The position numbers and the translations under genes are program-made. Of a DNA stretch of 64,000 bases, positions 23,453-55,600 are shown piece by piece; the stretch's first letter is position 1, and every line of letters begins with the position of its first letter. The notes below the pieces were generated by a model. That model was not told the DNA's origin, ran no database searches, and saw nothing but the letters and a program-made list of their open reading frames with translations. This stretch comes from Mobula birostris. Lineage: Eukaryota. The stretch covers positions 21,801,309 to 21,865,308 of the forward strand of contig NC_092379.1 of the NCBI RefSeq assembly GCF_030028105.1, given 5' to 3'.

Positions 23453-23776
23453 CTTGAATGTTTTTCACATCCTGCCTGACACTGGTGTTGGAGGGGGGAT
23501 GAGACACTGTGCATCTGAAAACTGAGCCTTCCTTCCACTCCTCTGTGCTCACGGTCAGGACGTAGCTGGCAATGAAAGTCCCTGCCTGTTCCAGAGCAGT
23601 TGGTCTCACACTGGTGTTGGAAGAGATCAGAGAGTCCCCTTTCTCCCAGGTGACGGTTATTTGGTCCGGGTAGAATCCAGAAGCAACACACTCGAGGGTG
23701 ACCGTGTTCCCACTCTTGGTCTCTCCCTCTGGCGGTGGCAGCAGTCTGACTTTGGGACCTTTTGTCTCCAGTGGAA
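23453..23776 (-). CDS. IgW: IgW CH8 exon (paralog of CH4)
   Basis: 324 nt, open; VPLETKGPKVRLLPPP...LECVASGFYPDQITVTW...FRCTVSHPPS; donor G|GTATGA. Confidence 0.88.
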
Positions 23777-23859
23777 CTGATGGGCAAACAATGGAAATGT
23801 CAAACATTTTTACTGAGGTAACCAACGTTGTCCATTTTAATCGCTGACCTCTTGCCCAC

Positions 23860-24162
23860 CTTTGGTACTTTTTGTCCGTGCTGATACTGGTGAGGTTGCA
23901 GAAGGTTGTTGGGCAGAGCAAGTGTACTCCACCCCACTGGTCCACTCCTCCACACTGGTCTGGAGTTGGCTGATCACTGTGTCTTGGGTTCCTTCCTCTC
24001 TCAGTTTTTTGGTGACATTTGCTTTGATTTTCTCCCTCTCATTCACCTTCCAGTGGATTTGGACCTGGCTCAGATCAGCACCCACAATCATACACACCAG
24101 AGTAGCGGTCTGGTTGATCCACATCTCTTCAATGGAGGGATTTTGGATAAAGACAGACAACT
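23860..24162 (-). CDS. IgW: IgW CH7 exon (paralog of CH3)
   Basis: 303 nt, open, same length and splice sites as CH3; about 53/101 aa identical by manual count. Confidence 0.9.
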
Positions 24163-30454: not shown

Positions 30455-30840
30455 TTACACACAAGATTTAAAACTATCAGTCAGAACGAGTGAGACATTG
30501 ACCAGGGTGAGTTTGCTGTGAGATTTATTGATGCTTCGGAACAGGTTGGTTGGGAGCGACTCATGACCCACCACACAGGAGAAAGTGGTGCCGCTATTCC
30601 ACTCCTCAGGAGAAACCTTCAGCTGACTGGTCATTGTGTTCCAGCCTTTTCTGGGGTCCTTGGTCACTGGCTGGTTCACAAACCCCGTCTTCAGAAGGCT
30701 GTCATTGGCCTTCCAGACCACATAGATCTCTGTGGGAGAGAACTTGGTGATCAGACACATCAAGGTCACAGTCTGATCGGTGTCTACCTCATCTGATGAA
30801 GGGAGGAGGAGGTAGACATGAGGACGAGTCAGAACACCAC
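30455..30840 (-). CDS. IgW: IgW CH6 exon with secretory tailpiece
   Basis: Acceptor ctctgttccag|GT; Ig domain then tail KLTLVNVSLVLTDSFKSCV* with N-x-S site and penultimate Cys. Confidence 0.94.
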
Positions 30841-31442
30841 CTGGAACAGAGAGAATCTCAGTTAGAATGAATCTTCCAATTATTCCCTACTTACCTGACA
30901 CATTCTGGTCTTGCACCAACATGAACAATTTCTAAATCTGAGGGGCTTCACTTGATCTGAAACTGAAGGCTTTTCCCTTTCTGCTCATTGTTGGGATTTG
31001 TGGAGTGGAAATCTTGGACCTGCTGCATTTTACAGCTTCCAGCGAGGTTAGTCTATTCAGTTTAATCAATGGGAGTAACTGAACACAGCAACTCGACAGA
31101 AAGTGGAACTCAGCCCCTGGACTTGCATCATCCTGTGCTGTTTGTTCCATCTCCCCTGGAGCAGGGGTGGCAGTCTAAGCTGTGTACATGGGAGAGGGAG
31201 TGAGAACCTGTGGAACTCTCTCCCACAGAAAGCACTTGAAGAATTATCATCTAACATATTCAAGAATGGGTTGAATATACTTCTTCGGGTGAAAGTGTCA
31301 AAGGATATCTGGAGAAAACAGGAACAGGGATTGAATTTGGATGATCAGCTGAGACCAGATTGAATGGTTGAGCAGTGCTGGATGGTGATTAATCTGTCAA
31401 ATTGCTAAGATCAGACTCACACTGAATTCTGTCCGCACGTAC

Positions 31443-31764
31443 CTGTGTCCTTCCTGATGGATTTCTTCACTGGTGTTGGCAAATTCTTGTCCTCTATCAC
31501 ACACGAGTACTCAGCCCCACTGTTCCACTCTGCAGCAGGGACTGTCAGTCTGCTGGTGATCACGTCTTCACCTCCATTGCTGTCTGGACCCAGAGTCCTC
31601 ACCTCATCTTCCCTCTTCCTTCCGTCCACTTGCCAGGTTACAATGAATCCCTGTAAATCACTGTGAACCACCTCACACAGAATGGTCGCTGTCCTCTTAC
31701 GTCCAGATCTCTTCGAAGGGAGGTTTGCTTAAAGTTACTGAGAGGGGGGTATCTGAGCAGTCAA
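31443..31764 (-). pseudogene. IgW: IgW CH5 exon with +1 frameshift
   Basis: 322 nt between good splice sites (3n+1); TGG ACG TAA stop at 31697-31699; removing one base restores WTKRTATILCEVVHSDLQG...YSCVIED. Confidence 0.88.
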
Positions 31765-33102
31765 CTGGGAGAAACGTCACAATTATTATTTCAAAATTCC
31801 CAAATGGATGAGTTTGTCTCTGACGACCAACATTTCCTGTTCATTCCCGGTCAATGATTTGCCAGTCCCATCAAGATGAGATGAGACCAATCTACATTGG
31901 TGAAGAAAGGAATCTCCCCTTTTGAGCAGATAGGGTAATACCCTGAGCAAATGTAAATGAACAAGATTGGCCCTCAGATTGTCTTTTGCAGTTTCATGGT
32001 CACTTAAACTGTTACCAGAGACTTATTAAAACAAATACAGAAAATCCCCAGTATTTCAGAATGTGTCGGTGGAACAAGAAACAGAGCAAAATTTCACATG
32101 AAAATCTTCCAGAAAATACACTTCATATTTCAAAATTTCTGAGAAATATTTAGTTTTTGTTACAAATATTAAAATGCACTCTTTTTGTCTATCAGGTGTA
32201 ACTAACATTTGCTGCTGCTTTGTCAGAATGTAGTATGTTCAGGCCGCCCTCCTGAGGCTTCTACACATTGTCCAGGCTGACTATTCTCACACAGGAGCAG
32301 AGGGAGAGCTGCTCTGCTGGAAATTCAGTCACATCTGAGGCACTGATCGGAGGCTGGGATTAGGTTCAAAGGTAGAGGGAGGGAGCATTTTGAAGACGAG
32401 TATCAGCGAGTTGCAGAGAGTCTGTCGAGTGAAATGGTCTGGATTCTCCTCCAGTTATGAAAGTATTTTCTGGGATACTCTTATTTCTATGGTGAAAGTG
32501 TGGATTATGTTGGTTGAGAGTGGAAAACAAACCGTTGATTGGCCGATTTAAGTGCCAAGAGAGATCAAAAAGATGAAGGCATTGAGGCTGAGTCAATGGA
32601 CAAACCGGTATTCAGCTCACTTCTCGATGAGGCTTCACTCGCCTCAGCACTGAACTGACTCTGCAGCTGCGGCCTGCAGCCATCGGCACTCACCTCAGCA
32701 CTGAGCCTGGCTCCACAGCCGTGGCCTGCAGCCATCGGACTCCTGGACCGGTTGCAGTGCTGAACTGGCAACATGGCTGTGGATTTACTTTGGGGGGCTC
32801 TGCGGTTCAGTTTCTGTGGATTGTTTGTTTGAATTTTTTTATTGTTTGCACAATCTTTTTTCACACATTGGATGTTTGACTCTGAATTCTATTGTATTTC
32901 TTTGTTTTGTGACTGCCTGCAAGAAGAGAATCTCAAGGTTGTATATGGTGCACATACTTTGATAATAAATGTACTTTGTACTTTGAACTTTATCAGTTCA
33001 CTCACATAACTAAACCAAGACTGCACCATTATTCGGTGTTTACCTTGAATTCATAGCACAATGTAAACAATTTCAATAATGGGATGCATCCCAGGACCCT
33101 AC

Positions 33103-33420
33103 CTTGGAAGTTCTTCACTTGTTTCTTGATACTGCTGTTGGAGGGGGGATGAATGACTGTACAGCTGAAGACTGATTCTGTCTTCCACTCCTGTAAACTC
33201 ACGGTCAGGAAGTGTCTGGCACTGAAAGTCCACCCCTGCTCCAGAGCGGTCGGTGTAGCACTGGTGTTGGAGTTGATCACGGTGCTGCCTTTCTCCCAGG
33301 TGACAGTTATTTGGTCCGGGTAGAATCCAGACACCACACACTCCAGTGTGGCTGTTTTCCAATTCTTGGTCTCTTCCTGAGGTGGAGGCAGCAGTCTCAC
33401 CTTGGGACTTCTTATCTCGA
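33103..33420 (-). CDS. IgW: IgW CH4 exon
   Basis: 318 nt phase 1-1; VEIRSPKVRLLPPP...LECVVSGFYPDQITVTW...FSCTVIHPPS. Confidence 0.93.
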
Positions 33421-33508
33421 CTGGAATAGAAAAGAAAACAAAGGAAATGTCAAACATTTTGACTCAGGTAACTAATGCTGGCCATTTAATCACTGGTCTC
33501 TTGCCCAC

Positions 33509-33811
33509 CTTTGGTACTATTGGTCCGTGCTGACACTCGGGAAGATGAAGGAGATTCCTGAGCAGAGCACTCGTACTCCACCCCACTGAACCACTCCTCC
33601 ACACTGATCTGGAGTTCGCTGAGCACTCTGTATCGGGACCCGTCCATCTCCGCTTGATGGGTGTGAATTCCTTTAGTTTTCTCCTTCCCGCCCACGTGCC
33701 AAGAGATGTGGATATCTTCGGGATCTGTACAGATAACTGTGCACTTCACGGTAGCAGACTTGTCGATCCACATCTCTTCAATGTCGGGATTTTGAATAGA
33801 GACAGACAATT
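33509..33811 (-). CDS. IgW: IgW CH3 exon
   Basis: 303 nt phase 1-1; ELSVSIQNPDIEEMW...KC...W...YECSAQ; canonical splice sites. Confidence 0.93.
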
Positions 33812-34379
33812 CTGTGGATTAGAAATTGAAATGCTCAGAATCTTACTGGAGATATTTCCATTGGTTGTGTTAGGTCCAGGCAGATCATCAGTACTTGACA
33901 GCTGCATTTAATGCAAACAGAATAACAGGAACACCCAGGGCTGAGTCACGTGCCTCATATTCCTATAAGTTTGATTGAGAAAAGAAATTCAGAACAAAGG
34001 ATGTGCTAACGAGGTTTAGAATCCCTTTCTAATAACTGTACCAATCGGTTCACTGTGAGACGGAGCTCTGTGAGACAGAGAAGCATGCAGATTTCTCAGC
34101 AGAGACACAGCTCAGTATATTCTTTGCTTGGAGACTCAGTGCCATTGATTAGTAACAGTGAACACTGTGAATCAATGAGAATCCCTTTCTCCATCTGGGC
34201 TGAGCCTGGGATTCACTCAGTTTAATAACTTCACATCCCGACATTCCAGTCTCACTGTGGCTGTGCCTCTCCTCATCTCTGCAACCTTCACCACCCACAC
34301 AAACTTCAGACAACATTGTATTCTTTCAACTCTGCTCACTCATACACCTGCACTACTTCTGCTGGTGCCTGTGGTTTTA

Positions 34380-34740
34380 GCATTCTTGCTGACAAACACT
34401 GAAGCCTCTGTCTCACTTGAAATGAGCAACATGGTCAGAGTGTATCCATAAGTTAGAGACTGATGAACTGGCAAAGTGGGTTCAAATCCCAACCTGGTGG
34501 ATGGGAGTTTAAATTCAATTCATCAATGCTTTTTGAAATAAAAAGAAGACTATGGAGGTATTTGTAGTGTTATTCTCTGTGGTAATTTCCAGAGAGAAGT
34601 CTCGTCTGGTCTGGCTGGTTTGTGACTCCAGACCTGCAGCAACACGGCTGGAGCTGAATCACCATCAGGAATGAGGCAGCAAGTCCCTCAGTTCCAGAGA
34701 GATCAGTGATTGATGGGAAATGATAAATGAATAAAACAGC
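34380..34740 (+). mobile_element. SacSINE/DeuSINE-like SINE remnant
   Basis: B box gggttcaaatccc, core tggtctggc...gtgactccagacc, A-rich end. Confidence 0.5.
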
Positions 34741-35849
34741 TCTTTGATCAAGTGTTGGGTCACCTGTCCTCTGGGTTAGTGTCAGTTTTGTGTGATTGCG
34801 GTCAAGTGAAGTTGTTGAGGTCATCTCCCACTGCACGATCGTCAGTTCACTTACATTGCAGCTCCCTGCACTTTGTGTTCACCATTTACACACTCGGTCA
34901 CCTTCAGGCACGTGGGGTGTTTCTGCTCTTTGACATTTAGTGTGGAGGCTGATTGTGTTTGTGTCATGGCTGAGACCTTCAATGAGACTGAGAGTCAGTG
35001 TCTTTGTCTGACGAAAGAGCAGACGTAACACACACAGTTCCAGTCTAACTGGGCCGGATCATCCGACAAGGTGTGATGTGTATTTCTTCACCTTTCTCAT
35101 GTCAGTAAGATTATGAGCAATTTTCTTTTAAAACAGAAAGTCCGTGGGTATAGTCCAGATGACCATTGTTGTCGAGTAATACCACAAATATGCAAACCTA
35201 GGTGTATACTGAATGCTCATTGAATTGTGAATCTTAGTTTAATCAGCACTGTGATGTTGTTAAACATGTTTTCTGCAGGTTTCTCAGTTATGTCCCATAT
35301 CAGCACAGTCTTGATGTTCAGCAGTCCCTGGGAAATGCGGTCCCCTCATAAAACCTGACTGAGTCAAGTTCGCTCCCCTTATTACTGAATGCTGGTGTTA
35401 TTCCACAAGAAGCATATAATTCTGTCAATGCTTGGGTAATTCTATCAAAACATCCTCCTTTGTGACATTCCTTAGAGTCACTGAATTTCCCTCTTGGACT
35501 GAATTCACTGTCCGGCACGTGGGTCAATGTAACTTTAGCAATTTGTCTGATCCAGGATTTACACACAAAGCATGTCAGATTGGACAGGAGACTGGTTAGA
35601 CCCCTGAGTCTTCTCTCACCAATTTGTCTTGTTCCCAGAATTATCAAAGGGTCATCCGTCCTTTGACTGAGTCAGCCCCGTTCACCTTCATCACCTCGTG
35701 CCTCACAGCCATTGGGTGAAAAACAGGTTCCAGTTCTTGTTGACTGGAGTTAGACAAGAGGGAATCTGGCCAAGGAAACTGGAATTGGGATCTGAGTCAC
35801 ACTGAAGCAACAATGTACACAAATGAATGAGTGTATGGACAACCAGAAA

Positions 35850-36480
35850 CACAAGAGATTCTACAGATGCTGGAAATCTTGAACAACACACTCAAAATGC
35901 TGGAGGAACTGGGCAAGTCAGGCAGCATCTGTGGATGGAAATAAACAGTCGATATTTTGGGCCGAGAGATTTCACTGGTACTGGAAAGGAAGTGGGCAGA
36001 AGCCAGAATAAGAAGGTGGGTGGAGTAGAGAGGAATACATTCTGTCAGATGAGAGGTGATACCAGGTGAGGGGGAAAGTGTGTGGACGGGAGAGAGGTAT
36101 GAAATAAGAAGCTGGTAGGGGATAAGTGGAAGAGATAAATGGCTGAAACAGAAGGAATCTGACAGGACAGTGGACCATGGAGGAAAGTGCAGGAGGAGGG
36201 GAACCAAATGGAGATGATGGGCAGGTGAGGAGAACTGAAGGGATGAGGGGGTGTCTAGTATGGGGAATAGAATAAAATGGAGAATAAAGGAGTGGGGACT
36301 ATTACTGCAAGTTAGGGAATAAGTATTCATGGGATCGGGTTGGCATATGAAGTGTTGCTACTCCAACCTGAATTTGGCCTCACCATGGCAGTAGAGGAGG
36401 CCATGGACAGACATGTCAGAATGGGAATGGGAAGTCAAATTGAAATAGGTGGCCACGAGGATAATAGAAATGCGATTGGA
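35850..36480 (-). mobile_element. Decayed Penelope-like 3' end and terminal repeat
   Basis: Resembles 5000-5500 (gcagcatct..., purine-rich tract, atgggaatggga), with a degenerate hammerhead. Confidence 0.65.
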
Positions 36481-36613
36481 GAGGTAGTCAGTTTGAATCG
36501 TGTTTTCTTCTCTTTCTGTTAAACGTCAATCCCAATGGATACCAGAGGCAGGTCTGGAATCTAGTAAATGGAGTGTAATAAAATTCAATGACGAATTGTA
36601 GACAGCCAATCAC

Positions 36614-36631
36614 TTTATTTCACACTTTATT
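36614..36631 (-). terminator. Tandem polyadenylation signals in the CH2-CH3 intron
   Basis: AATAAA on minus strand at 36626-36631 and 36614-36619. Confidence 0.55.
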
Positions 36632-36972
36632 GCTGAACAATGATACTGTTGGGTAGAACCATCGGAGAATGTTGCATTGAGATTACTCTGTTGAAACAAC
36701 ATTGCCACTGGCTTCGAAAAACAGTCGGGACCTGGAAACGGAAGATTCATAGATTTAATTGTTAGATATTTTCACCTCTTTTCCCATGCTTGGGAAAAAG
36801 GGAGCCCCACATATTCCCACTTTCTATCCTCTGTATATCACATCCTATCGGGATGAGGTTATGTCAGCCATGATAAATGCATGTTGTCTCTGAACCTGGT
36901 CGAGGATCTGAGGACACAAGGTCGCAACATTCACTGGAGGATTGGGCATCAATTCAAAAATAATCCAGGCAC

Positions 36973-37031
36973 CTACAGTGGACAATCGACAGAAGAGTCT
37001 CTCAGGAAACACTGGAAACAGACTCTGGAGA
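36973..37031 (-). CDS. Candidate short-form secretory exon (VSRVCFQCFLRDSSVDCPL*)
   Basis: Strong acceptor tttgcatttgcttcag 363 nt after CH2; phase-1 reading gives a 19-aa three-Cys tail; two AATAAA about 340 nt downstream. Confidence 0.5.
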
Positions 37032-37394
37032 CTGAAGCAAATGCAAAATTGCAGAGATATTTTTAGAAGAACTAAAACGAGAAGACAGTGAAAAGGGAAC
37101 AGGGAGATCTTCTCCAGATGGTAAAGCCTGGGACGTGAGCTTTGCTCACTAACTTATTTTATTTATAACTACAAACAAAGACAACTAAAATTATTGAGAC
37201 AGAATGGACAGGTGACCTAATCTTACACCTTTCCTGCCCAGTTAAAGCTGCTGGTGAAATGAGTTGATTCAAGGTGCAAAGATCATCTGTACGTCACTCA
37301 ACAAGATTGACGGTAGGGACAGGAATTGTGTGGGAGTATTAGTTTAGTATTTTAGTACTCTAAGTTAATTAATTTTTCTTCCGATATCACTCAC

Positions 37395-37694
37395 CCTCTT
37401 GATACGTCATGTTGACCTGACCACTGAAACCGGAGGGTGCGTGATTCACTTCACAAGTATATTTCTGTTTCTTGGTCCAGTCCTGCATAGGCACTGTCAG
37501 GTAAGAGATTGTTTCAAATGTACCATCAGATCTCTGAGTGGAACGGAGAACAATCCCTTCTTGGGCAGATCCAGCTTTTTTCCAGAATACTTCAATGTTG
37601 TCAGGAGAGAATCCAGATATCACACAGCCCAGGACAGCATTTGCTTGACTGTGGATTGCCTCCCGGGATGGAACAAGGGAGCTGAGCTTTGGAG
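37395..37694 (-). CDS. IgW: IgW CH2 exon
   Basis: 300 nt phase 1-1 exon; C1-set Ig domain (LGCVISGFSPDNIEVFW...YTCEVNH), donor G|GTGAGT. Confidence 0.93.
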
Positions 37695-38644
37695 CTGTAA
37701 CACAATAAATATCTGTCAGTACATGATTGCTTTGCCCAAGTTTTGGACTTCATTCCCCCTCATCCTGGACAAGTTCCCCAATTCCAGTCCTCTCAAGAAT
37801 GTTGTTAATTTACAGCTGATCTGATGATCTGATGGCTCACACCAGCAAATGGGAGGGCTGGGTGTATAACTTGGACCTCCCAGCAGTGTGTCCCACTGTG
37901 CTATGATAATGCAGAGAGGTGGGTCATGGGGTTGAGGTGCAGACCTGCCATGATCTAATTGTTTACTGGAGAATGACTGATACCAGCTCCTGTGAGCATG
38001 TGTACATGGTGTGGGACTGTTTCCATTAGCAAGTTTGGGAAACACAATTTTACTTTCAATGAGAAAGAAGAACAGATGGACAGGAGGAAATTAATTTGTT
38101 GTAACTGTAAAGGCTTGTTCAGATCTGTGAGAAGATGGTTAAAGAAGGGCAGTGGAGTGGATTCCTTCATCACATTCACAAGGGATTGCTTTTCCCAGAA
38201 GAGGGGCAGCTGCAGGGTGGAGGGGAAAGTGCAGGAGGAGTGGGGTAAAGCTTAAATTGTCGTTCTGTGTGCAGGGGTACGATGGGCCAGCGGTCTCTGT
38301 ATGTGTACAGGAGCTGATCTGTAGGGAGGGTTTAGTGGGGGAGGGGGGGGGTGGAGAGTCTCCCGAAAGGAATGGATACAATGGAGGCAGATCAGCACAA
38401 GTTGTGTCCTCCACCCTCCACTGATACTGAGTTTCAGTGAGTTCAGGAGGACGTTTCCCCCATTTCAATTCCTTATTTTTTCTCAATGTCAATTTGGTAA
38501 GGGGTAGGGGGTAGTACTACTGTTGTAAGAGTAGATTAAAGGAGCTAGTTGCCATGCCCAGCATTATCTGACAAAGATTCCTACTCCAGATTTATGCTCT
38601 GAGATCAATGCAGCTTTTAAGAGAAAATTACGTCTCATACTAAC

Positions 38645-38938
38645 AGTGATGTTTCGGGAACACCGCTGTCACACTCGCTGCCTTGCAGGAGTAGACTTTA
38701 TTCTTCTTCCAGTCTGCCGCAGAGACTTCGAGCAAGCTGCTCATCGTGTACTTTGAATTTTGCCCCAACACCGCCGGGTATTTCTTGATTCCGCTGGTGA
38801 TGTCCCCACTGTTAGTGGACCATGTCTGACTGATGCTCTCAGGCTGATAGTCCTTGACCAGACAGAGGAGGCTGATCTTTTGGTCAGATTCTGTGTTGCA
38901 GGAAGGAGTGATGTAGACTGATGGCGAGGACGTGAGCT
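38645..38938 (-). CDS. IgW: IgW CH1 exon
   Basis: Acceptor tttcag|AG; [14 protein letters not shown]...[17 protein letters not shown]...YSCKA; N-terminal Cys typical for light-chain bond; 294 nt to a phase-1 GTTAGT donor (3' end less certain). Confidence 0.88.
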
Positions 38939-39949
38939 CTGAAATGGAAAGAAATTCACAGAAATTTCTGTAAATAAATGCATTACTGGCAGACAAAGAA
39001 GGAGACATGTTATTCACTACAATTACTACAGTACTGTGCTGAAGTCTTAGCCACATAGCTGGATTACCCCCCCCCCCCCCCAACACACACAGTAGTAACT
39101 TTATGTATTGCACTGTACCTCTGCCACTAAACAAAAACAAATTTCATGACAGATGTGAGTGAGGATAAACCTGATTCTGATGTGGGTCTCTATTGTGGAC
39201 TGAGAGTGGGAAAGGGGAGTGAGTGGGAAGCACCAGAGAGACATTCTGGAAAGATCAATAAACCAATAGTTTGGAATGAAATGACCTTGCCTGTTGTCTC
39301 AGTGTTGGGAGTGTCTGCACCCGTGCCGAGCCCTGCCCCTGCCACTCCTTCTCTGTCCCCTGTCCCACTCACATCCCGCAGCGCTCCACCCTCACCATTC
39401 CCAACATCCTTTGCTCTCACCAGATTTACAAACTCACTCTCCATTCCACATTGATAAATATGTTATTATGATAAAGTTTTAGGCACACTAGCAATATAGA
39501 TGTGCCCAAGACTTTTGCACAGTACAGTTTACAAACCAGTAATTTCTAAAATTATTCACTCCATTAAATAATACTCTCACCATTTCAACACCCAGCTGGG
39601 AATCTGTGTCACTGAGCTCAGAGGCTATGGATCAGTCTCACAGTGGAAGTTTGAGCACACAGTCACAAGTGTGCCCCAACACCCCACCCACAGCCATACT
39701 GAGACAGTCACCCAATGTCCCATGTGTTGGATTTCAGACAAAATGTCAAAGTTTTACCTTGTCTCTTCCCCAAATATAATTCCTGATTCTTAGAAGTCTA
39801 TTCGCACCAGATTGGTGGAGTTTACAGAAAGAGTAAACATTTAGCAGTAGTTTATTTGAATAATTATGATCTGTTCAGTATTGATGTTGAGTCTAAAGTA
39901 ACCCTTGTGTGCATATCTGTACCTTGTCTCCAACACCATCTGTGTGATA

Positions 39950-42605: not shown

Positions 42606-43135
42606 ACATCAAGTGAGGATTTCCCAGTGGTGGGGAGCTTTAGGAATTGTTGGCTAAAAGTGACCATTCCCTTCCAACATCACCCAGACTAGATTGTCAT
42701 GTTGTAGTTCAGTTTGTGGGAACAAGATGCAGACAAGTTGGATGTTTAGTCACCCAAATGAAGTGACACACTGCAGAAGTACTTGCTGGGTTGGGAAAGG
42801 CTCTGGGATGTTCTGGGGTTGCAGAAGTCAATGAAAAACAAATTGTTTTCATCAAAATAAATTCAGTAAAATAAAACTGGAAACAGCATAGTTGCCAGAA
42901 ATCAGAGTGACAGAGTCTGGTGAAAGGTCACTGATGTGAAACATTAACTCTGTTTCTCACCCACAGATGTTCCCTGAGCTGCTCAGTGTCGGCAGTGCAG
43001 GAGGCACAATAATGTCAGTCGGTGAGATTTGCAGCTGAGGATCTTTTACATCCCGAGACCAGCAGGTGGTAAGTACAGTTCTGTCTGGATCAGTGTTCCT
43101 CTGGGTCTTCATAAAGACACCCATCAAACTGACAG

Positions 43136-43620
43136 CAGGGTGCTGGGGTGAAGAGGGGAACTGGATCTGGGTAGGTCACAGGGTGCTGGGGCGAAGAGGG
43201 GAACTGGATCTGGGTGGGTCACAGGGTGCTGGGGTGAAGAGGGGAACTGGATCTGGGTGGGTCACAGGGTGCTGGAGTGAAGAGGGGAACTGGATCTGGG
43301 TGGGTCACAGGGTGCTGGGGCAAAGAGGGGAACTGGATCTGGGTGGGTCACAGGGTACTGGTGTAAAGAGGGGAACTGGATCTGGGTGGGTCACAGGGTG
43401 CTGGAGTGAAGAGGGGAACTGGATCTGGGTGGGTCACAGGGTGCTGGGGTGAAGAGGGGAACTGGATCTGGGTGGGTCACAGGGTGCTGGGGTGAAGAGG
43501 GGAACTGGATCTGGGTGGGTCACAGGGTGCTGGGGTGAAGAGGGGAACTGGATCTGGGTGGGTCACAGGGTGCTGGGGTGAAGAGGGGAACTGGATCTGG
43601 GTGGGTCACAGTGTGCTGGG
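43136..43620. repeat. 43-bp G-rich tandem array, 11 full units plus a partial
   Basis: Unit cagggtgctggggtgaagaggggaactggatctgggtgggtca, near-identical copies, in the J-CH1 intron. Confidence 0.95.
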
Positions 43621-45030: not shown

Positions 45031-46202
45031 AGGACATGGGAGCTGTAATCTGCATTTAATTCATGCTCTGTGTACCCTGAGGTGATTGATGGAATCCCTT
45101 TGAGGAAGAATTTCCCAGATTTACAAGATAAATACTGATTCCATTGAATGACAGAGCAGAGAGTGAGGCCATTCATACTATTGTTTCCGTGCTTCCCTTT
45201 AGCTGAGCAAACCCAATAAACCCATTGGTCTTTCTGCTCTTCCCTGTATCCCAACAAAAGGCGGATCTCCTCCTTTTCCCTCTCTACACTCACAATTAGC
45301 CACCACCATCATTCAGGCAGTGTGTTCCAGATCACAAGTCTTCCCTTAAATACTCCCCTATTACACATTATTGACTTGAACGCTTCCCTCCCCACCCCAC
45401 CTGCACCACTCCCCACTCCCCCACCCACCAATGCAAGGCTGCCCGGAATGTGTGAAGGAATTGTGACTTCAATTCCCGGCCATACCTTTCCTGCACGACT
45501 TCCCCACTGCCTTCCCAACTCCAAAATTCTTCCCACCGCACCCCACCTCCTCACCCATCAGGGAATAAAAGTAAAACGTTAATCCCATCAATTAATTCTG
45601 GGATATTGCCGATACTTTTGCTGTATCGCGGGACGGACCTCACGCCGGACATTACATGATGGGACTGACACCCACCTGTACCCTGGGGATATTGAGCCAT
45701 CAACCAGATGATACATGTGTACACCATTCCCTCAGATTATGTCTTAATCCCATTACCTTCAACATGAAAGCAGCTGACAGTAAAACCCGATCCCAATAAC
45801 TGGACACTGAACAGATCCATTATTGTCACTGACAGGGAACAAGTTCAACTGCACTGAAACGCTCAGCCCCTGAACGTGGCTTCAGTCGGTGCTGAGGATC
45901 AGAAGCCAGACTTGAACCAAACATTGAGCTCACTCAGCACAATCGGCCGGTGTCAAGGCACAGTCTGGTGACAAGATCCGACCCCATTCCCCTGAGCCTG
46001 TTCCCGGTCTGTGGACAGGTCACTGGTGGGTGGGGTATGTACCCTTGTACTGTTACTGGGCTCCAGAGAAACCCGCCGGTTCGGGGAGATTCATGTACTG
46101 CTCTAAATATCGCACTGATTTCAGATGAATCGACAGATTCACCAAACCCGTAAATAAATAAAATACTAGCGCGTGAAGATACGATTGAGAAGTTGGTCTT
46201 AC

Positions 46203-46250
46203 CTGAAGTCACTGTCAGCGGGGTTCCTCCGCCCCAGTAGTCAAGATTGT
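46203..46250 (-). CDS. JH segment (NLDYWGGGTPLTVTS)
   Basis: WGxGT motif, RSS upstream, phase-1 donor TCAG|GTAAG. Confidence 0.95.
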
Positions 46251-46289
46251 CACAGTGCTCCGTCTCCCCATTCACCGAGTGCAGTAACT
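46251..46289 (-). other. 23-RSS of the JH segment
   Basis: Heptamer CACTGTG abutting J, 23-nt spacer, degenerate nonamer (plus strand gcagtaact). Confidence 0.82.
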
Positions 46290-46624
46290 TCACTTGCCCG
46301 TCACATCCAATAATCTCAGCAAAATGTCAACATGATCCCTGTCCGGACCGGGAGCAGCCGCTTCCTGGATTTCCATCCCAAACTTCGTCCTTGTTTCTTC
46401 CTGGCGTGTGAATAAAAGAGGCATTTTCACAGTTTTCTTGTCTGCGGACAACGGCTCTCGCCATTCCCCAGAATCAGAGTCGAATCATTTTGGGCTTTTA
46501 ATTGTCCAGAAATGGACATTTGCGCCCAGCAGTCCGAGTGAGGCTTCATGGATTTGACTCTGGGAAGCAGCAATGCGGAATCCGTGGAGACAGACTGCGC
46601 TGCAGACGCTCCTTTGTCGGGACC

Positions 46625-46691
46625 AGTTTCTGTTCAGCTCGCCATCACCGTGCACAGTGTGAGAGATGGCGGCTCCCTCCATACACAAACC
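46625..46691. other. Precise RSS signal joint: 12-RSS fused heptamer-to-heptamer with 23-RSS
   Basis: Plus strand: agtttctgt-12-caccgtg|cacagtg-23-acacaaacc; no bases between heptamers; creates GTGCAC (ApaLI) at 46650-46655. Confidence 0.92.
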
Positions 46692-47026
46692 CACCGCAAC
46701 AAAACTCTTTAAATCGGGCTCTTCGGGCGCTTCCACCGGCCCTTACCCCGGGATCCGTGGATATAAATCAGATCCCGAGTGGATAATCCGGGAGTGGGTA
46801 CAAGTTCCACTGGAGATGTGTCCGGAAGGGAACGAGACCACCGAGGAGGAGCTGTCAGGGGAAGCCCAGTGAAAGGTCCCGGTGGGTTATATCATCTCCA
46901 CTTCAGCACTGGGATGGCCGAGATTGAGACCCGCTGTGTGGGACACCCGGACACAGAGGGAGAGTTTAATAAATCCGCTGACCGGCTCTGGGATCCACTG
47001 GATTTTGGGTTGGATGTGATGAGGGC

Positions 47027-47054
47027 GGTTTGTGACCTGTGGTGAAGCACCGTG
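47027..47054 (-). other. 12-RSS following the V-D fusion (CACGGTG-12-TCACAAACC)
   Basis: Heptamer 47048-47054, 12-nt spacer, nonamer 47027-47035; points toward J. Confidence 0.9.
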
Positions 47055-47376
47055 ACGAAACTGCCACCCAGTATAGCTCTCGCACAGTAATAGGTGGCCG
47101 TGTCGTCCAGTCTCAGGTTGTTCATTTGCAGATAAAAGTTGCTGCTGCTCTTGGAAGCGGTGAAGCGGCTCTGGACTCCAGGCGCGTAGTACTTGGTGTT
47201 ACTTTCATCATAGCACGTTACCAGCCACTCCAGCCCTTGCCCGGGGACCTGCTTCACCCAGCTCATCCAGTAGCTGTTGACATTGAACCCACTGACCGCA
47301 CAGGACAGTCTGTGGGACTGCCCGGGCTTTACCACCGCTGACTCGGGCTGTGTCAGCACGATGTCGGACCGCACAC
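47055..47376 (-). CDS. IgW VH exon already fused to D-derived sequence (DIVLTQPES...[12 protein letters not shown])
   Basis: Acceptor ttattgacag|GT; canonical Cys, WVKQ and YYCAR; 23 nt of extra in-frame sequence after CAR codons, then a 12-RSS instead of the V 23-RSS. Confidence 0.95.
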
Positions 47377-47485: not shown

Positions 47486-47531
47486 CTGCCAGACAAGACA
47501 GGAGGAGACAGAGATAAGGAACGACCCCCAT
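47486..47531 (-). CDS. IgW heavy-chain leader exon ([16 protein letters not shown])
   Basis: ATG at 47531, hydrophobic signal peptide, phase-1 donor G|GTGGGT; splices in frame to the V exon. Confidence 0.93.
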
Positions 47532-49639: not shown

Positions 49640-52600
49640 AGGCAACATACACTGGCATCAGTGAAAGTAGTTCGACAGAGTTTGGCAGATGAAAAGCAGC
49701 AACTGGTGAAACTATTTTCTATGCAGGAAGACAAGATGGTCAGCATCATGATGGTGTAGCTGTCATTTTGAAGAAAGGCATTGATAAGTCCCCACTGGAG
49801 TGAAAACCATTGAACAGTCGGCTGGTGAGAGTCAGGCTGAGAGTGAAGCAAGTGAACATGACTGTGATCCAGTGCTATGCTCCAAATAACAAGAGTGATA
49901 TTGAAGAAAAGGGCATCTTCTACAAACAGCAGAGATAGAGTTAACATCACGCCATGACATAATCATCATCATGGGAGATCTAAATGGCAAAGTGGAAAAT
50001 ACAACTCACACTTCACTAGGGTTATGGGTACATAGGGATGTAGAACGATCAATAACAATGGTGAAAGACTGGTGGAATTCTGTGCCATGAACTATCTGGT
50101 CACAGGAGGAACCCTCTTTCCGGACCACGAAATCCACAAACTGACATGGTGCTCACCCAGTGGACATGACAAGATCCAGATTGACCATTTGATGATCGAT
50201 GGTACATGGAGACGATGCTTGCAGGATGTAAAGGTGAAGAGAGGAGCAGATACAGGGAGTAATCACCACCACCATCTGTAATCCATTGGACAATGACTTT
50301 GGTGAGACAAATGAGTGGTGCCACATCAATTGTTGCAATCACTTAGTGCTCCTTTCTTGGGGATCCTAACTCCCTTTGTCCAGTCCTTGGACACTTGTCC
50401 CCATTCACAGATTGTTGTAAACAGAGGTTGCAGGAACCCAGTCGCAGACCAAGTACTGTGCACACTGTGATATTTACTGAGTAGCAAATCCAGAGGGTCA
50501 ACAAGGTCGGCATCAAAGTTCAGGCAGAGATCAAAAATTCCAGAGAAATCCAAAAACCAGAATCGGGACTGGAGCACATGGGGCATGAAAACAAACAAGA
50601 GCACATGGCAATACAAAAGCACAGACTGATGGCGAGGGGGAAAACACACAAAAAGACAAAGTTCAGTTGGAGGTACTGACAGACTGCTGCAACTTTTTGT
50701 TCAGCTTTGAACAGTTTGGCTTTCAAATTGTCATGTTCTGGAGCTTTGCTGTTTCTTAACGATTTAATCACAGTAACAATTGTTATGTACCCCGTAACTG
50801 GGTTGCCAAACCAGCAGAAATGGATCACTCAGTTGGAGTCTGGATTACCAGGACTAAGAAAGTTTTATTAAAGAAACAAGCAACACAGTACTCTAATCAA
50901 AAGGATAATAAATGCAACAGTTCAGCAATGATAAACACACCTGTGCACAGAATTAAGATAACAGGATCAATCAAGCTCTATCGTTGTCTAGGGGTAAATG
51001 ACCAGTTTCAAAGTGACACAAAGTCCAGTTCAATTTAGTTCAGTTTGCAGTAATCTTTGCCATGGCGATGGACAGTGGGGGGGGGCGGGGAGAGAGAGCA
51101 AAATGAATGAATATTCAACACAGCTTCCACACAGACCTTCGCAGTCAGCTTTCTGGCGAGTCCTTTGTGATGTCTCTCTCTCTCTCCTGAAGACAGGTAG
51201 CAGACCAACTGCTGATCACACAGGACAGCGAACATTTTAATCTATGTGTATTCTTGTCACGCTTCCCCCCTTTAAGGATTTTTCCCGGGGGGGCAAAAAT
51301 TACAAACGTGAATACATTATTTGATACACACACAAATATACATCTTTATCAGCTATTTGGCTAATACAGCGAGTTTGAAGTTGTCAACACCTGACAGACA
51401 GTCAGCCATCACATTTTCTGTTCCTTTTATACGTGTTATTAATAATCCCTTAGACCAGGCTCCAATTTAGCAAACTTCATAGTGGCCAAAAACACTGATG
51501 AATTGCGATCAATGTAACCTCTCATTTGGTTTTGTCCCGGACCACAATAACAAGGGTCGTCCCATTCCGACTTAGTTTTCTCTCGCAAGGGCTTAGTGGG
51601 AGGGGGAGGGGTAGTGACCACAGAGTTATTGCAAAACTTCCTACAGTACCCCACCATCTCCAAGAGCCTTCTGAGGGCCCTCTTGTCTGTCGGGGTTTGG
51701 AGGTCAGCGATAGCCTGCACTGTAGCTTGTATCGCTGCCAGCTGCCCCTGTGTCACCACAATTCCCAGGTAAGTGACCTTCGTGTGGCCGAACTCATTTT
51801 TTTCAAGGTTCACTCTCAAGCTGGCTTCAGACAGCCGTATTAAATTGCCAATACACACCTCTGTTTTCGTCAGCCCTTTAGTCACTGAATTACTCATTCT
51901 ATATGATTGTTGCTTGCTAGGCTGACCTAACAGACACCACCCAACGTCCCAGTTCTTTGCATCGCCTCGGGACAATCAAACACACGGGTGCGAGTCGTTT
52001 AATTGCTTCTCCTAAAGAGTCGCTTTGTTCGGGGATTAAGGGAGAGACCTTATCAGCAGACCTGGCCAAAACAATAGCCTTCTCCCATCTGGTGGATACC
52101 ATACTCATCTTTTCAAAATGGTTTTTTTCTCTTATCGGGGGGACCCTAGCTTCATTGATTTCCGCGCTAACATGGACTAGGTTTGTTAGCATATCAAAAG
52201 CCTGTGACCGTCTCAGTTCGCGTCGGTCATAATCAATAACATCCTTCCCCCTGGGCAGCCGGTAAACCTCTTTCATGATTCCACCAACTGTTCCCTCCAG
52301 TACCGCAAAATGTCCACCGGGGGGTACCTTGTGGGCCAGGTTAAAAACCTCATCCCCATAACTCTTTTGCACCACCCCTCATTCCGCATCTGCAGGTACG
52401 GTACTTGGTCTCCCTTTCTTCCTTAGCACTTCCTCCTCCACCAAAACCATCAGCCCCTCGTCTCGCTCCTGCGTCTGCACAAATTCTTTCCTGGCTAATG
52501 TTACGTCCGTCCCAGCTCCCTCACTACCTCTTGCCTCACTACACTCCTTCTTTTCACTTTCTACCCCCTTCTCGTACAAGGCTGGCAGAAACGTCTCAGC

Positions 52601-55600
52601 TAAATTCACTACCGCGGTCCCGTGATGAACCTGTGAGTCCATGGGCGGGGCCTCAATGCTGGCAGGCTGACCTGTCAATCTCACGACTGGGAACACGATT
52701 CCCCCGGCGACGTCATTACCAAGCAAGACTTCCACGCCTTTCATCGGTAATTCGGACCTCACCCCGATCGTGACTAGTCCAGAGACCAGGTTGCTTTGTA
52801 AGTGTACCTGGTGCAAAGGGACTGACTCTGTCCCTTCCCCAACACCTTGGACCTTTACCTCCCCAGTCTGGGTCTCTGAGCTAAACTCTAATACACTCTT
52901 CAGTATTAGTGGCTGACACGCTCCCGTGTCTCTCCAGATCCGCACTGGAACTGGTTTTAACCCCTCCTTTGCCGACACCAATCCGGCCGGGGTAAACCTC
53001 TCGCGCCCTTCCTGAACGTTGGCAGACCTGTCCTTCCTTAGCGGTTCGTTTACCAGCTCGATACAGCCAGTCAAAATCGCTGTTTTTCCTTTTCCCGTCT
53101 CCTTCTTTGGGGCAAAGCACCTGGACGCAAAGTGTCCGGCTTTCCCGCAATTATAATAGACGACCCCAGGAGACTTCCTGCCAGACTGCTCCCGGTCTAC
53201 CTTATCCCTCTCACTAGTCCCCGGCTTACTTTCTGACTTTTCCGGCGGACTCTCCCCGCCGTCCTGACTACCCTTCAGGTAGCCTTTACTCGGGGCAAAC
53301 TTCATTTTTTGCGTCAACGCATACTCATCCGCTAACTTAGCAGTTGCGGCTAACGTGGCTGCCTCTTTCTCATCTAGGTAGGGTCTCATACCCTCAGGGA
53401 CACAACCTTTAAACTGCTCAATCAGGATCCGCTGTAGCAGTCTGTCATAATCCCCATCTACCCCCTTCGAGGCGCACCAACTCTCACAATATGTCTGCAT
53501 CTCACGGGCAAACTCTAAATACGTGCGGTCCCACTGCTTCCTCGCATTCCGGAACCTCTGCCGGTATGCCTCCGGGATCAACTCATAAATCCTGAGGATG
53601 GCCTCTTTCACCACCTCATACCTCTGGGCATCTTCCGCTGACAAAGTTGAGTAAGCTTGTTGGGCTTTCCCTTTCAGTACACTTTGAAGCAAAACAACCT
53701 ACTTATCCCTCGGCCATTCCAGCCTAACCTCCTGGGTCGCCCGGAACCCTCCACCTTGGTTCGGCACGAGACCCTGCTCGGCCCTTATCTTTAACTTCTC
53801 CAGCTCAAATTCCTTTTCCCTCTGCCTCTCTCTCTCTTCTCGCTCCCATTGCCTCTCTTTCTCTTCTCTCTCCAACTGTTTCTCCCTCTTTCTCTCTGGC
53901 CTTTCTAACTCTCTCTCTTGCCTTTCTAACTCTTTCTCTTTCTCCCGCCTTTCTAACTCTCTCTCTTTCTCCTGCCTTTCTAATTCTCTCTCTTCCTCCC
54001 GCCTTTCTTGCTGCTTCTCTTCATGTTCTAACTGTCGTACCCGGAACTCGTGCTCGAGTCTCAGTTTTTCAAGCTGTACCTGTACCGCGTCTCCGGCAGG
54101 TTTTTCAATAGACACCACCCCCAGCTCGCCTTGGGGAAACACACCTTTAGATGCATAGTGCTCTATGATAGCTCTGTGTATCTCCTCTCTCCTCATTGTC
54201 AACTTCCCCTTAGCAAGATTCAACAGTTTGACCACAGCTACCAATTCCGATTTCCTGGCATCCTCTAATGCCTCCAAGGTCGGCGCCTTTATAAATTCCT
54301 CAGCCTCCATTTCTGCTGTTTGTCTTTTCTTTCTTTTGGGAATTTTGACCCAATCAATTTACTCCGTCCCAAATTTAGCATTCAAAATCGCGGACGAGAA
54401 CCCCACTTATGTTACGTACCCCGTAACTGGGTTGCCAAAACAGCAGAAATGGATCACTCAGTTGGAGTCTGGATTACTAGAACTAAGAAAGTTTTATTAA
54501 AGAAACAAGCAACACAGTACTCCAATCAAAAGGATAATAAATGCAACAGTTCAGCAATGATAAACACACCTGTGTACAGAATTAAGATAACAGGATCAAT
54601 CAAGCTCTATCGTTGTCTAGGGGTAAATGACCAGTTTCAAAGTGACACAAAGTTCAGTTCAATTTAGTTCAGTTCGCAGTAATCGTTGCCATGGCGATGG
54701 ACAGTGGGGAGGAAGGAGAGAGAACAAAACGAATGAATATCCAACACAGCTTCCACACAGACCTTTGCAGTCAGCTTTCGGGCGAGTCCTCTGTGATGTC
54801 ATCTGAGGTCACCAACTGTGACCCTTCCATTTCCAGATACGATCGTTTCCCTGCATTGAACCTGGCACCCAGGCAAGGGTGGACACACACCAGGTTCCCG
54901 CTGATCGTGCCTTTCCACCCTGAGCGTCTAAGGCTTGATCCCGCAATCAGCCATCCAAAAGCTTCCCACCGGCTTCTGAGAGGCCCACCACTTCCAGGGT
55001 CTCGTTACCTCGGGTGTCGTGTGTGTCCTGCCTTAGCGAACCTGTCCCTTTTTATCCCCCTGCTGGGGTATCGCCTGTTCTTCACTTCAAACAGTTCAGG
55101 GTTCAAAGGGGGAGCCGCTCTTGACAGCTCTCCTTCCCCTTCATTACACATCTCCAAATGCTGCTCCATTGTTTTCCTTATCTCTCTCTCTCCTGAAGAC
55201 AGGTGGCAGACCAACTGCTGATCACACAGGACAGTGAACATCTTAATCTACGTGTATTCTTGTCACACAATCTCTTCCTTCTTGAGTGGATCTGCGTTGA
55301 TATCAAGGTCCTCTGCGTCCATTCAGTAAATCTCTGAAATGCCCTGTCCATCATTCTTCGTGCATTTGTCAAAAGTAGACAGTTCTTAACTCTCATGGGG
55401 CTACTAGGTCTGGCTTGGAACTTTCCACATACCAATTTTGAAATCGTGTATATATTTTCCTGATCACGTCAATTGGCTGCTGCTGTGGCCAGCATGCAAG
55501 GTCTTCCATGTAGACTCTTTTATCCATTCTTAAAAGCTCTTCACATTCTTGCTAGCGTCAGTGAATGCCAGTTGAAGTTTCACCTTAATTTGTGTTGACT

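What the first reader, a model, noticed from the sequence alone, without database searches (positions are those of the whole stretch)
47027..47086. Pre-joined, in-frame V-D1-inverted D2 junction encoding a fixed CDR3 start ([10 protein letters not shown])
Seen: after TGT GCG AGA come 23 nt (GCTATACTGGGTGGCAGTTTCGT) and then a 12-RSS, where an unrearranged shark VH has a 23-RSS directly. The insert contains an inverted repeat ACTG...CAGT, and both 12-RSS here share the variant heptamer CACGGTG. Inference: forward D1 (CTATACTGGGTGG) is joined tail-to-tail to inverted D2 (ACGAAACTG read on plus). That needs two RAG events: D1(23) x D2 3'(12) inversion and V x D1 deletion. The alternative is V joined to a single long inverted D. 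The frame is open and 12/23-compatible with J, so the gene could still finish rearranging somatically (blunt join is out of frame; -1 or +2 nt restores it), giving a semi-invariant CDR3.
Basis: partly seen in the sequence, partly recalled or inferred. Interest (0 to 1): 0.8.

Follow-up and report, generated by a model that had tools for sequence, protein, structure and literature searches.

The report
Inherited V-D1-inverted-D2 antibody gene joint
In one IgW antibody gene of this ray, the inherited DNA already has V fused to D1 and to a back-to-front D2, which shows that the antibody-cutting enzyme RAG once acted in the germline by flipping a DNA block; part-joined genes are long known in sharks and rays, but I found no report of one made by inversion.

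Summary

**What is there (minus strand).** An intact IgW V exon ends TGT GCG AGA G at 47077. It is followed by 13 nt of forward D1 (47076-47064), 9 nt of inverted D2 (47063-47055) and a 12-RSS (47054-47027).

**Comparison with an unrearranged sawfish IgW cluster (L001, V-D1-D2-J).**
- The 404-nt block 47055-46652 is the sawfish segment, from the D1 3' 23-RSS to the first base of D2, in reverse orientation (87% identity, E 1e-142).
- Homology starts and stops exactly at heptamer borders.
- The 23-RSS in the retained signal joint (46652/46653) is D1-type (spacer 21/23), not V-type (10/23). This refutes the one-step "V to a single inverted D" alternative.
- The D1 part matches sawfish D1 at 11 of 12 positions.
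- The D2 part does not match sawfish D2. It does resemble this cluster's own D1 (7/9).

**Function.** The frame, the J segment and six C exons are open. Expression and germline fixation could not be tested.

**Novelty.** This is a new variant of the known germline-joined Ig genes. The scan had already noted the signal joint on this same DNA (s1-145059).

The parts
47486..47531 (-). Leader exon (ATG at 47531), followed by a GT splice donor
   Evidence: The leader peptide is identical to that of ray IgW V models P0034 and P0037. The upstream TATA-like box and the promoter region are conserved with sawfish.
47077..47376 (-). V exon of an IgW-type VH, open, with the conserved Cys/Trp/Cys; it ends TGT GCG AGA G
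   Evidence: Pfam V-set E 4e-16. It is 83% identical to the Hemitrygon IgW V and 76% to the Pristis 'Ig delta heavy chain-like' protein. Homology with the sawfish V stops at 47077.
47064..47076 (-). D1-derived nucleotides, forward orientation (CTATACTGGGTGG); the 3' end is untrimmed
   Evidence: 11/12 identical to sawfish D1 when anchored at the heptamer border, p about 2e-6.
47055..47063 (-). D2-derived nucleotides, inverted (CAGTTTCGT; forward D2 = ACGAAACTG), still attached to their never-cut 5' RSS
   Evidence: The assignment is by topology. The 9 nt match this cluster's own D1 5' part at 7/9, p 0.0013. They do not match sawfish D2 (2/9).
47027..47054 (-). 12-RSS now flanking the V-D1-D2 fusion; originally the 5' RSS of D2, now inverted
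   Evidence: 25/28 identical to the sawfish D2 5' 12-RSS, with identical heptamer and nonamer.
46692..47026 (+). D1-D2 intersegment DNA, inverted relative to V
   Evidence: blastn: window(-) 47055-46652 aligns to L001 6306-5908 on the minus strand, 87.4% over 404 nt, E 1e-142. See also alignment A1.
46653..46691 (+). 23-RSS, originally the 3' RSS of D1; it forms one half of the retained signal joint
   Evidence: 37/39 identical to the sawfish D1 3' RSS against 25/39 to the V RSS. The same block lies forward after a V-D1 fusion in the Mobula birostris paralogue P0034.
46625..46652 (-). 12-RSS, originally the 3' RSS of D2; it forms the other half of the signal joint, heptamers abutting with no loss or gain
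   Evidence: 24/28 identical to the sawfish D2 3' RSS. The same RSS and its downstream flank follow CAR-GWE in paralogue P0052.
46251..46289 (+). J 23-RSS (heptamer CACTGTG as read on the minus strand; weak nonamer that is conserved with sawfish)
46203..46250 (-). J segment (NLDYWGGGTPLTVTS) followed by a GT donor
   Evidence: Homologous to the sawfish J.
30458..39140 (-). Six open C1-set constant exons, at about 38.9, 37.6, 33.7, 33.3, 31.6 and 30.7 kb; the last carries a secretory tail (IgW long form)
   Evidence: Pfam C1-set hits; tblastn and open reading frames.

Best explanation
This is an IgW heavy-chain cluster whose ancestor had the usual layout V(23) - (12)D1(23) - (12)D2(12) - (23)J. 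RAG recombination changed it in the germline in two steps; their order is unknown.

Step A. The 3' 23-RSS of D1 paired with the 3' 12-RSS of D2. These two signals point the same way, so joining inverted the DNA between them. D1 was fused tail-to-tail to an inverted D2, which is the coding joint. The two signals were fused heptamer-to-heptamer about 400 bp downstream, which is the signal joint, and it stayed in the chromosome.

Step B. The V 23-RSS paired with the D1 5' 12-RSS in an ordinary deletional join, fusing V to D1.

The product is V-D1-D2(inverted), followed by the former 5' 12-RSS of D2. That RSS now points at J.

Shown: the anatomy, the orientation, which original RSS each present RSS descends from, and the frame.

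Inferred: that the events happened in germ cells. Also inferred: that lymphocytes can finish the gene with a single 12/23-legal join to J. Such a join would delete the signal joint and give a CDR3 starting ARAILGGSF, with diversity at one junction only.
For: - blastn against the unrearranged sawfish cluster L001 gives three collinear pieces. V aligns forward (87%). The block from the D1 3' RSS to the D2 5' RSS aligns reversed (87.4%, 404 nt, E 1e-142). The stretch from the D2 3' RSS through J aligns forward (82.6%).
- The breakpoints fall exactly on heptamer/coding borders.
- RSS identities: the signal-joint 23-RSS matches the D1 3' RSS at 37/39 and the V RSS at 25/39. The junction-adjacent 12-RSS matches the D2 5' RSS at 25/28. 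The signal-joint 12-RSS matches the D2 3' RSS at 24/28.
- The D1 part matches sawfish D1 at 11/12. The D2 part matches this cluster's own D1 at 7/9.
- Mobula birostris paralogues carry the same blocks in forward orientation. P0034 has V-D1 followed by the 23-RSS block. P0052 has V-D followed by the D2 3' 12-RSS.
- There is no sign of N additions at the V-D1 joint, where only about 1 nt is missing from each side relative to the sawfish ends.
- Leader, V, J and six C exons are open. A -1 or +2 nt join to J is in frame.
- Germline RAG joining is established for cartilaginous fish (PMC2193156, PMC5192425).
Against: - The 9-nt D2 part has no similarity to sawfish D2 (2/9). No D2 from a manta or stingray cluster could be fetched, because the assemblies were too large.
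- No annotated protein reads through the inverted block, so there is no paralogue, orthologue or transcript support.
- Germline presence rests on a single assembly.
- The J nonamer is weak (5/9 to consensus), although it is conserved with sawfish.
- The two signal-joint RSSs lie between the fusion and J and could compete with, or divert, the final join.
Confidence: 0.85

Rival explanations
1. One-step model: the V 23-RSS recombined by inversion with the 3' 12-RSS of a single long D flanked by 12/12 RSSs. Under this model the whole insert is one inverted D.
For: It predicts the same overall topology. An earlier scan note (s1-145443, unchecked) reports a sister cluster with only one D flanked by 12/12 RSSs.
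Against: - The signal-joint 23-RSS is D1-type (spacer 21/23), not V-type (10/23).
- The inverted block is homologous to the D1-D2 intersegment, not to the V-D1 intersegment.
- The left part of the insert matches D1 in forward orientation at 11/12.
- No inverted D1 with its RSSs lies inside the block.
Confidence: 0.03
2. Hybrid-joint route. First the RSS-bounded D1-D2 intervening DNA was inverted by hybrid joints, as described for a horn shark cluster. D2 was then excised between its new 5' 23-RSS and its own 3' 12-RSS, which left the signal joint. Under this route the 9 nt next to D1 are junctional insertion, not D2.
For: An inversion of this hybrid-joint type is reported in Heterodontus (PMC2193153, citing Kokubu 1988). 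The 9 nt do not match sawfish D2.
Against: - It needs three RAG events instead of two.
- It needs a 9-nt untemplated insertion in germ cells.
- The 9 nt resemble a D segment (7/9 to D1, anchored at the heptamer border, p 0.0013).
- One standard inversion yields both joints at once.
Confidence: 0.04
3. The arrangement is not inherited. It is either a somatic lymphocyte rearrangement captured by the assembly or an assembly error.
For: Only one assembly was seen, and no independent reads or individuals could be checked.
Against: - A single lymphocyte clone cannot dominate a consensus assembly.
- An assembly error would not place its breakpoints exactly on heptamer borders, nor remove exactly the stretch from the V RSS to the D1 5' RSS.
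- There are no apparent N additions.
- According to scan notes and to P0052 and P0034, many other clusters in this genome are germline part-joined.
Confidence: 0.05
4. The origin is as in the best explanation, but the gene is a neutral relic. It is never completed or expressed, so there is no semi-invariant CDR3.
For: - No transcript or protein with this junction was found in the databases.
- The blunt join is out of frame and gives a stop.
- The signal-joint RSSs may divert recombination.
- The literature doubts that many joined genes are used, apart from some expressed early in life (PMC2193156).
Against: All exons, splice sites and RSS heptamers and nonamers are intact. The promoter region is conserved with sawfish.
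Confidence: 0.4

Closest known systems
Germline-joined (VD-J, VDD-J, VDJ) immunoglobulin genes of sharks, skates and rays (Kokubu 1988; Lee et al. 2000, PMC2193156; review PMC5192425)
   Same: V is fused to D nucleotides in inherited DNA. The RSSs and intersegment DNA are lost at heptamer borders. One somatic join to J remains. The fusion is attributed to RAG activity in germ cells.
   Different: The described cases are deletional joins with D segments in forward orientation, and nothing of the reaction's by-product remains. Here the D1-D2 joint was made by inversion, D2 reads backwards, and the signal joint is still in the chromosome. The review states that shark and ray clusters call for deletional rather than inversional rearrangement.
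Horn shark (Heterodontus) cluster with the D1-D2 intervening sequence inverted by hybrid joints (described in PMC2193153)
   Same: A germline, RAG-type inversion of DNA between D1 and D2 of a heavy-chain cluster.
   Different: There the D1 3' RSS paired with the D2 5' RSS. The RSSs were swapped, D1 and D2 stayed separate and forward, and no coding joint or signal joint was formed. Here the partner is the D2 3' RSS, and a standard coding joint plus a signal joint resulted.
Somatic inversional V(D)J recombination (for example Ig kappa V genes in opposite orientation, TRBV30, inverted D use in IgH)
   Same: The chemistry and topology are the same. Two RSSs in the same orientation are cut. The coding joint and the precise signal joint both stay on the chromosome, and the block between them is flipped.
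   Different: Those events occur in lymphocytes and are not inherited. Here the product sits in the assembled genome of the animal.
Chicken VH pseudogenes with fused VD
   Same: VD fusions carried in the germline and thought to stem from RAG action in germ cells (PMC2193156).
   Different: The chicken pseudogenes lack RSSs and act as gene-conversion donors. Here a usable 12-RSS, a J and a full C region remain.

Membership tests
Germline-joined Ig heavy-chain gene of cartilaginous fish | V is fused directly to D-derived nucleotides, with no RSS between them | tested here: met
   V homology ends at 47077, and 13 nt matching D1 follow at once.
Germline-joined Ig heavy-chain gene of cartilaginous fish | An unrearranged relative shows that exactly the RSS-bounded DNA is missing | tested here: met
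   Sawfish L001 5460-5892 (the V 23-RSS, the V-D1 spacer and the D1 5' 12-RSS) has no counterpart in the window.
Germline-joined Ig heavy-chain gene of cartilaginous fish | Present in non-lymphoid (germline) DNA and inherited | not testable with these tools
   Only the assembled window is available. DNA of the Mobula and Hemitrygon assemblies could not be fetched.
Inversional V(D)J recombination product | The block between the two cut sites is inverted relative to the unrearranged layout | tested here: met
   Window(-) 47055-46652 aligns to L001 6306-5908 in reverse, 87.4% over 404 nt.
Inversional V(D)J recombination product | The coding joint and the reciprocal signal joint are both retained on the same chromosome | tested here: met
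   The coding joint lies at 47064/47063. The heptamer-to-heptamer signal joint lies at 46653/46652.
Inversional V(D)J recombination product | The partner RSSs obey the 12/23 rule and have the same orientation in the ancestor | tested here: met
   The D1 3' 23-RSS and the D2 3' 12-RSS both lie on the plus strand of L001.
Inversional V(D)J recombination product | The inverted coding segment is recognisable as D2 | tested here: inconclusive
   2/9 identity to sawfish D2 and 7/9 to this cluster's own D1. No manta D2 was available.
IgW (IgD-like) heavy-chain cluster | IgW-family V followed by J and six C1-set constant exons with a secretory tail | tested here: met
   The best V hits are ray 'Ig delta heavy chain-like' proteins and the Heterodontus IgW V W26. 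There are six open C1-set exons. No phylogeny of the C exons was made.

The most novel reading that the evidence does not exclude
The cluster is a working IgW gene. Germline RAG action, through an inversional D1-D2 join, has hard-wired the first two thirds of its CDR3 (ARAILGGSF), so that D2 is read backwards. Lymphocytes complete it with a single join to J. This would give an innate-like, semi-invariant IgW specificity, perhaps used early in life. The retained signal joint would make this the first inherited record of both products of one RAG reaction.
Probability: 0.25. Interest if true: 0.75.

Novelty: new variant of a known kind. Interest (0 to 1): 0.6.

Why it matters
Germline-joined antibody genes are the main evidence that RAG has acted in the germ cells of sharks and rays and has reshaped antigen-receptor loci. 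Until now that evidence has rested on coding joints alone.

Here the coding joint (V-D1-inverted D2) and its reciprocal signal joint survive side by side. The reaction can therefore be reconstructed base by base, and the partner RSSs can be named.

The finding shows that the 12/12-flanked D2 of elasmobranch clusters can be used by inversion. It also shows that germline events are not limited to deletional joins, contrary to what reviews assume. In addition, an RSS can be moved onto a new coding segment in this way.

Finally, it offers a concrete, testable candidate for a semi-invariant IgW receptor.

Tried and rejected
- **Fetching sister clusters.** I tried the loci of Mobula birostris (P0052, P0034), M. 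hypostoma (P0050), Hemitrygon akajei (P0037) and Scyliorhinus (P0045). No DNA came back because the sample files were too large. Only the sawfish locus L001 was returned.
- **First V-exon search.** This search, with short length limits, found no ray hits.
- **Read-through of the inverted block.** A search for any protein reading through the block found nothing, even at E up to 1. There is therefore no evidence for shared inversions or for transcripts.
- **Earlier scan notes.** Look-ups by sequence and by the D2 letters gave nothing.
- **Octamer search upstream of the leader.** It was uninformative: 80 hits against 70 expected, and none at the promoter.
- **P nucleotides.** I considered whether the ACTG/CAGT repeat marks P nucleotides and rejected it, because the arms are not contiguous.
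- **Copy of the RSS nonamer.** I considered whether the 9 nt are a copy of the 3' RSS nonamer region (ACAGAAACTG). I judged this a coincidence, because about one such near-match is expected in a few kb.
- **Hemitrygon P0049.** I considered reading its 'CARDWGGYGT' as a VDD joint that would show a D2. I dropped this because the sequence after it matches neither an RSS nor J.
- **Kokubu 1988.** The paper could not be read.

Full report
**1. What is in the sequence**

The gene lies on the minus strand. Its parts, in order, are:
- A leader exon (47531-47486) and a 109-nt intron.
- An open V exon (47376-47077). It scores as a V-set domain (E 4e-16).
- A 12-RSS: heptamer CACGGTG 47054-47048, a 12-nt spacer, and nonamer TCACAAACC 47035-47027.
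- About 335 bp further on, a 23-RSS (46691-46653, readable on the plus strand). It abuts, heptamer to heptamer with nothing lost or added, a second 12-RSS (46652-46625) that has the same CACGGTG heptamer.
- A J segment (46250-46203, NLDYWGGGTPLTVTS, with a GT donor), preceded by a 23-RSS (46289-46251).
- Six open C1-set exons between about 39.1 and 30.4 kb. The last ends in a secretory tail.

A stringent RSS scan of the whole 64-kb window finds four sites. Three of them lie in this 430-bp stretch, whereas shuffled sequence gives 0.27 on average.

**2. Which gene family**

The V exon is closest to ray gene models:
- Hemitrygon akajei, 83% identity.
- Mobula birostris, 77%.
- Pristis pectinata 'immunoglobulin delta heavy chain-like', 76%.
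- The Heterodontus 'IgW heavy chain V region W26', 61%.

Together with the six C1-set exons, this makes it an IgW cluster. Earlier scan notes call the genome giant manta ray. I could not verify the species directly. However, the Mobula birostris model P0052 matches the window's D2-J spacer at 88-95% amino-acid identity.

**3. The decisive comparison**

Only one related locus could be fetched as DNA: the sawfish locus L001. It is a fully unrearranged V-D1-D2-J IgW cluster with this layout:
- V ends ...TGTGCGAGAGA, followed by a 23-RSS.
- D1 (ACTATATACTGGATGG) has a 5' 12-RSS and a 3' 23-RSS.
- D2 (ATATGGATATAC) has 12-RSSs on both sides.
- J has a 23-RSS.

blastn of the window's minus strand against L001 gives three pieces:

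| Window (minus strand) | L001 | Orientation | Identity | Content |
|---|---|---|---|---|
| 47640-47077 | 4892-5459 | forward | 87% | promoter, leader, intron, V |
| 47055-46652 | 6306-5908 | reverse | 87.4% over 404 nt, E 1e-142 | D1 3' RSS to D2 5' RSS |
| 46652-46100 | 6318-6868 | forward | 82.6% | D2 3' RSS through J |

The alignments show that homology begins and ends exactly at heptamer/coding borders.

The individual signals can be assigned as follows:
- The signal-joint 23-RSS matches the sawfish D1 3' RSS at 37/39 (spacer 21/23). It matches the sawfish V RSS at only 25/39 (spacer 10/23).
- The RSS next to the junction matches the D2 5' 12-RSS at 25/28.
- The signal-joint 12-RSS matches the D2 3' 12-RSS at 24/28.

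The variant heptamer CACGGTG is thus ancestral to D2's signals. It is not a product of decay.

**4. Dissecting the 23 nt**

- V homology runs through the G at 47077. The sawfish V ends AGAGA, so about one base was trimmed.
- The next 13 nt (CTATACTGGGTGG) match sawfish D1 at 11 of 12 positions when anchored at the heptamer border (p about 2e-6). They are in forward orientation, and the D1 3' end is intact.
- The last 9 nt (CAGTTTCGT) are still attached to the never-cleaved former 5' RSS of D2. By topology they must be the 5' end of D2 read backwards (forward ACGAAACTG).
- These 9 nt do not resemble sawfish D2 (2/9). They do resemble this cluster's own D1 start (7/9 when anchored, p 0.0013).

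**5. Support from the same genus**

Public gene models that read through V into flanking DNA act as translated copies of sister clusters.
- Models from Hemitrygon, Pristis and Mobula hypostoma show a V-type 23-RSS directly after CAR.
- Mobula birostris P0034 has V fused to a long D1. After that comes the D1-type 23-RSS and the D1-D2 spacer in forward orientation. These match the plus strand of the window at 46654-46758, which is the strand opposite to this V.
- Mobula birostris P0052 has CAR-GWE followed at once by the D2 3' 12-RSS and the D2-J spacer (88% over 110 residues). That is an ordinary deletional VDD join.

The same genus therefore holds the forward versions of both blocks.

**6. Mechanism**

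The layout V(23) - (12)D1(23) - (12)D2(12) - (23)J allows the D1 3' 23-RSS to pair with the D2 3' 12-RSS. These two signals point the same way. Standard V(D)J chemistry therefore inverts the DNA between them. It yields a D1-D2(inverted) coding joint and a precise signal joint that stays in the chromosome. This is established knowledge of inversional V(D)J joining, summarised in PMC2193153.

A second, deletional join between the V 23-RSS and the D1 5' 12-RSS fused V to D1. The order of the two events cannot be told.

The one-step alternative (V joined to a single inverted D) is excluded by three results:
- The 23-RSS is D1-type, not V-type.
- The inverted spacer is the D1-D2 spacer.
- D1 lies in forward orientation in the joint.

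A hybrid-joint route of the Heterodontus type, followed by excision of D2, would need three events and a 9-nt untemplated, D-like insertion. I give it about 4%. An assembly or somatic artefact is unlikely for breakpoints of this precision, but it cannot be excluded from one assembly.

**7. What it can still do (inferred)**

The fusion now carries a 12-RSS that faces the J 23-RSS, so one legal join would finish the gene and delete the signal joint. Outcomes depend on junction processing:
- A blunt join gives a stop codon.
- Loss of one base gives [26 protein letters not shown].
- Gain of two bases is also in frame.

All exons, splice sites and signals are intact, and the promoter region is conserved with sawfish.

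No transcript or protein with this junction was found. However, the searches could only see annotated or called proteins of limited length, so expression remains open. The two signal-joint RSSs lie between the fusion and J and might compete. That is the subject of another note (s1-146205) and was not tested here.

**8. Comparison with what is known**

- Partly and fully germline-joined heavy-chain clusters (VD-J, VDD-J, VDJ) have been known in sharks and rays since 1988. They are attributed to RAG activity in germ cells (PMC2193156, PMC5192425).
- A germline inversion of the D1-D2 intervening DNA by hybrid joints is described for horn shark (PMC2193153). There D1 and D2 stay separate and no signal joint forms.
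- The review literature states that shark and ray clusters call for deletional rather than inversional joins.
- Lee et al. note that inversional joining in germ cells should be rarer, because two ligations are needed.
- Five full-text searches found no report of a germline coding joint made by inversion, of an inverted D in a joined gene, or of a retained germline signal joint. The key 1988 paper could not be read.

I therefore class this as a new variant of a known kind.

**9. Verdict**

Confidence in the origin is about 0.85.

The functional reading (a semi-invariant CDR3) is plausible but untested. Interest is 0.6: the finding is an unusually complete molecular fossil of a germline RAG reaction, within a phenomenon that is already known. 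The scan had already noted the signal-joint half of this structure on the same DNA (s1-145059).

Noticed in passing
window 23424-24160 (minus strand): A second pair of C-domain exons lies about 6 kb downstream of the secretory-tail exon. They are 54% and 66% identical in protein to the C exons at 33.8 and 33.4 kb. They could be duplicated IgW C3/C4-like exons or the remnant of another cluster.
   Followed up: partly
window 46100-47055 versus L001 5908-6868: The non-coding D1-D2 and D2-J spacers are as conserved between this ray and sawfish (83-87%) as the V exon itself (87%). This suggests either very slow evolution or constraint on the intersegment DNA.
   Followed up: no
window 47055-47063 and 46624-46633: The forward D2 remnant ACGAAACTG is nearly the same as the nonamer region of the D2 3' RSS (ACAGAAACTG; one base fewer). 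This is probably coincidence.
   Followed up: partly
Proteins P0034, P0037, P0039, P0043, P0044, P0050, P0052 (public annotations): Public gene models for ray IgW V genes read straight through the RSS into intersegment DNA or splice across D segments. They are annotation artefacts, yet they are useful as translated copies of the flanks.
   Followed up: yes
window 47200-47215 (minus strand, CDR2): The V exon encodes an extra cysteine in CDR2 (LVTCYDES). Sawfish and stingray relatives have A/S/E-Y/H-Y at this position.
   Followed up: no
window 51439-54310 (minus strand): Long ORFs with a gag-like zinc knuckle and protease/RT-like parts indicate a retroelement about 4 kb upstream of the IgW promoter.
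   Followed up: no
window 43066-43452 (plus strand): A tandemly repeated unit of about 100 nt lies in the J-C1 intron. As an ORF it repeats the motif GCWSEEGNWIWVGHRVLG.
   Followed up: no
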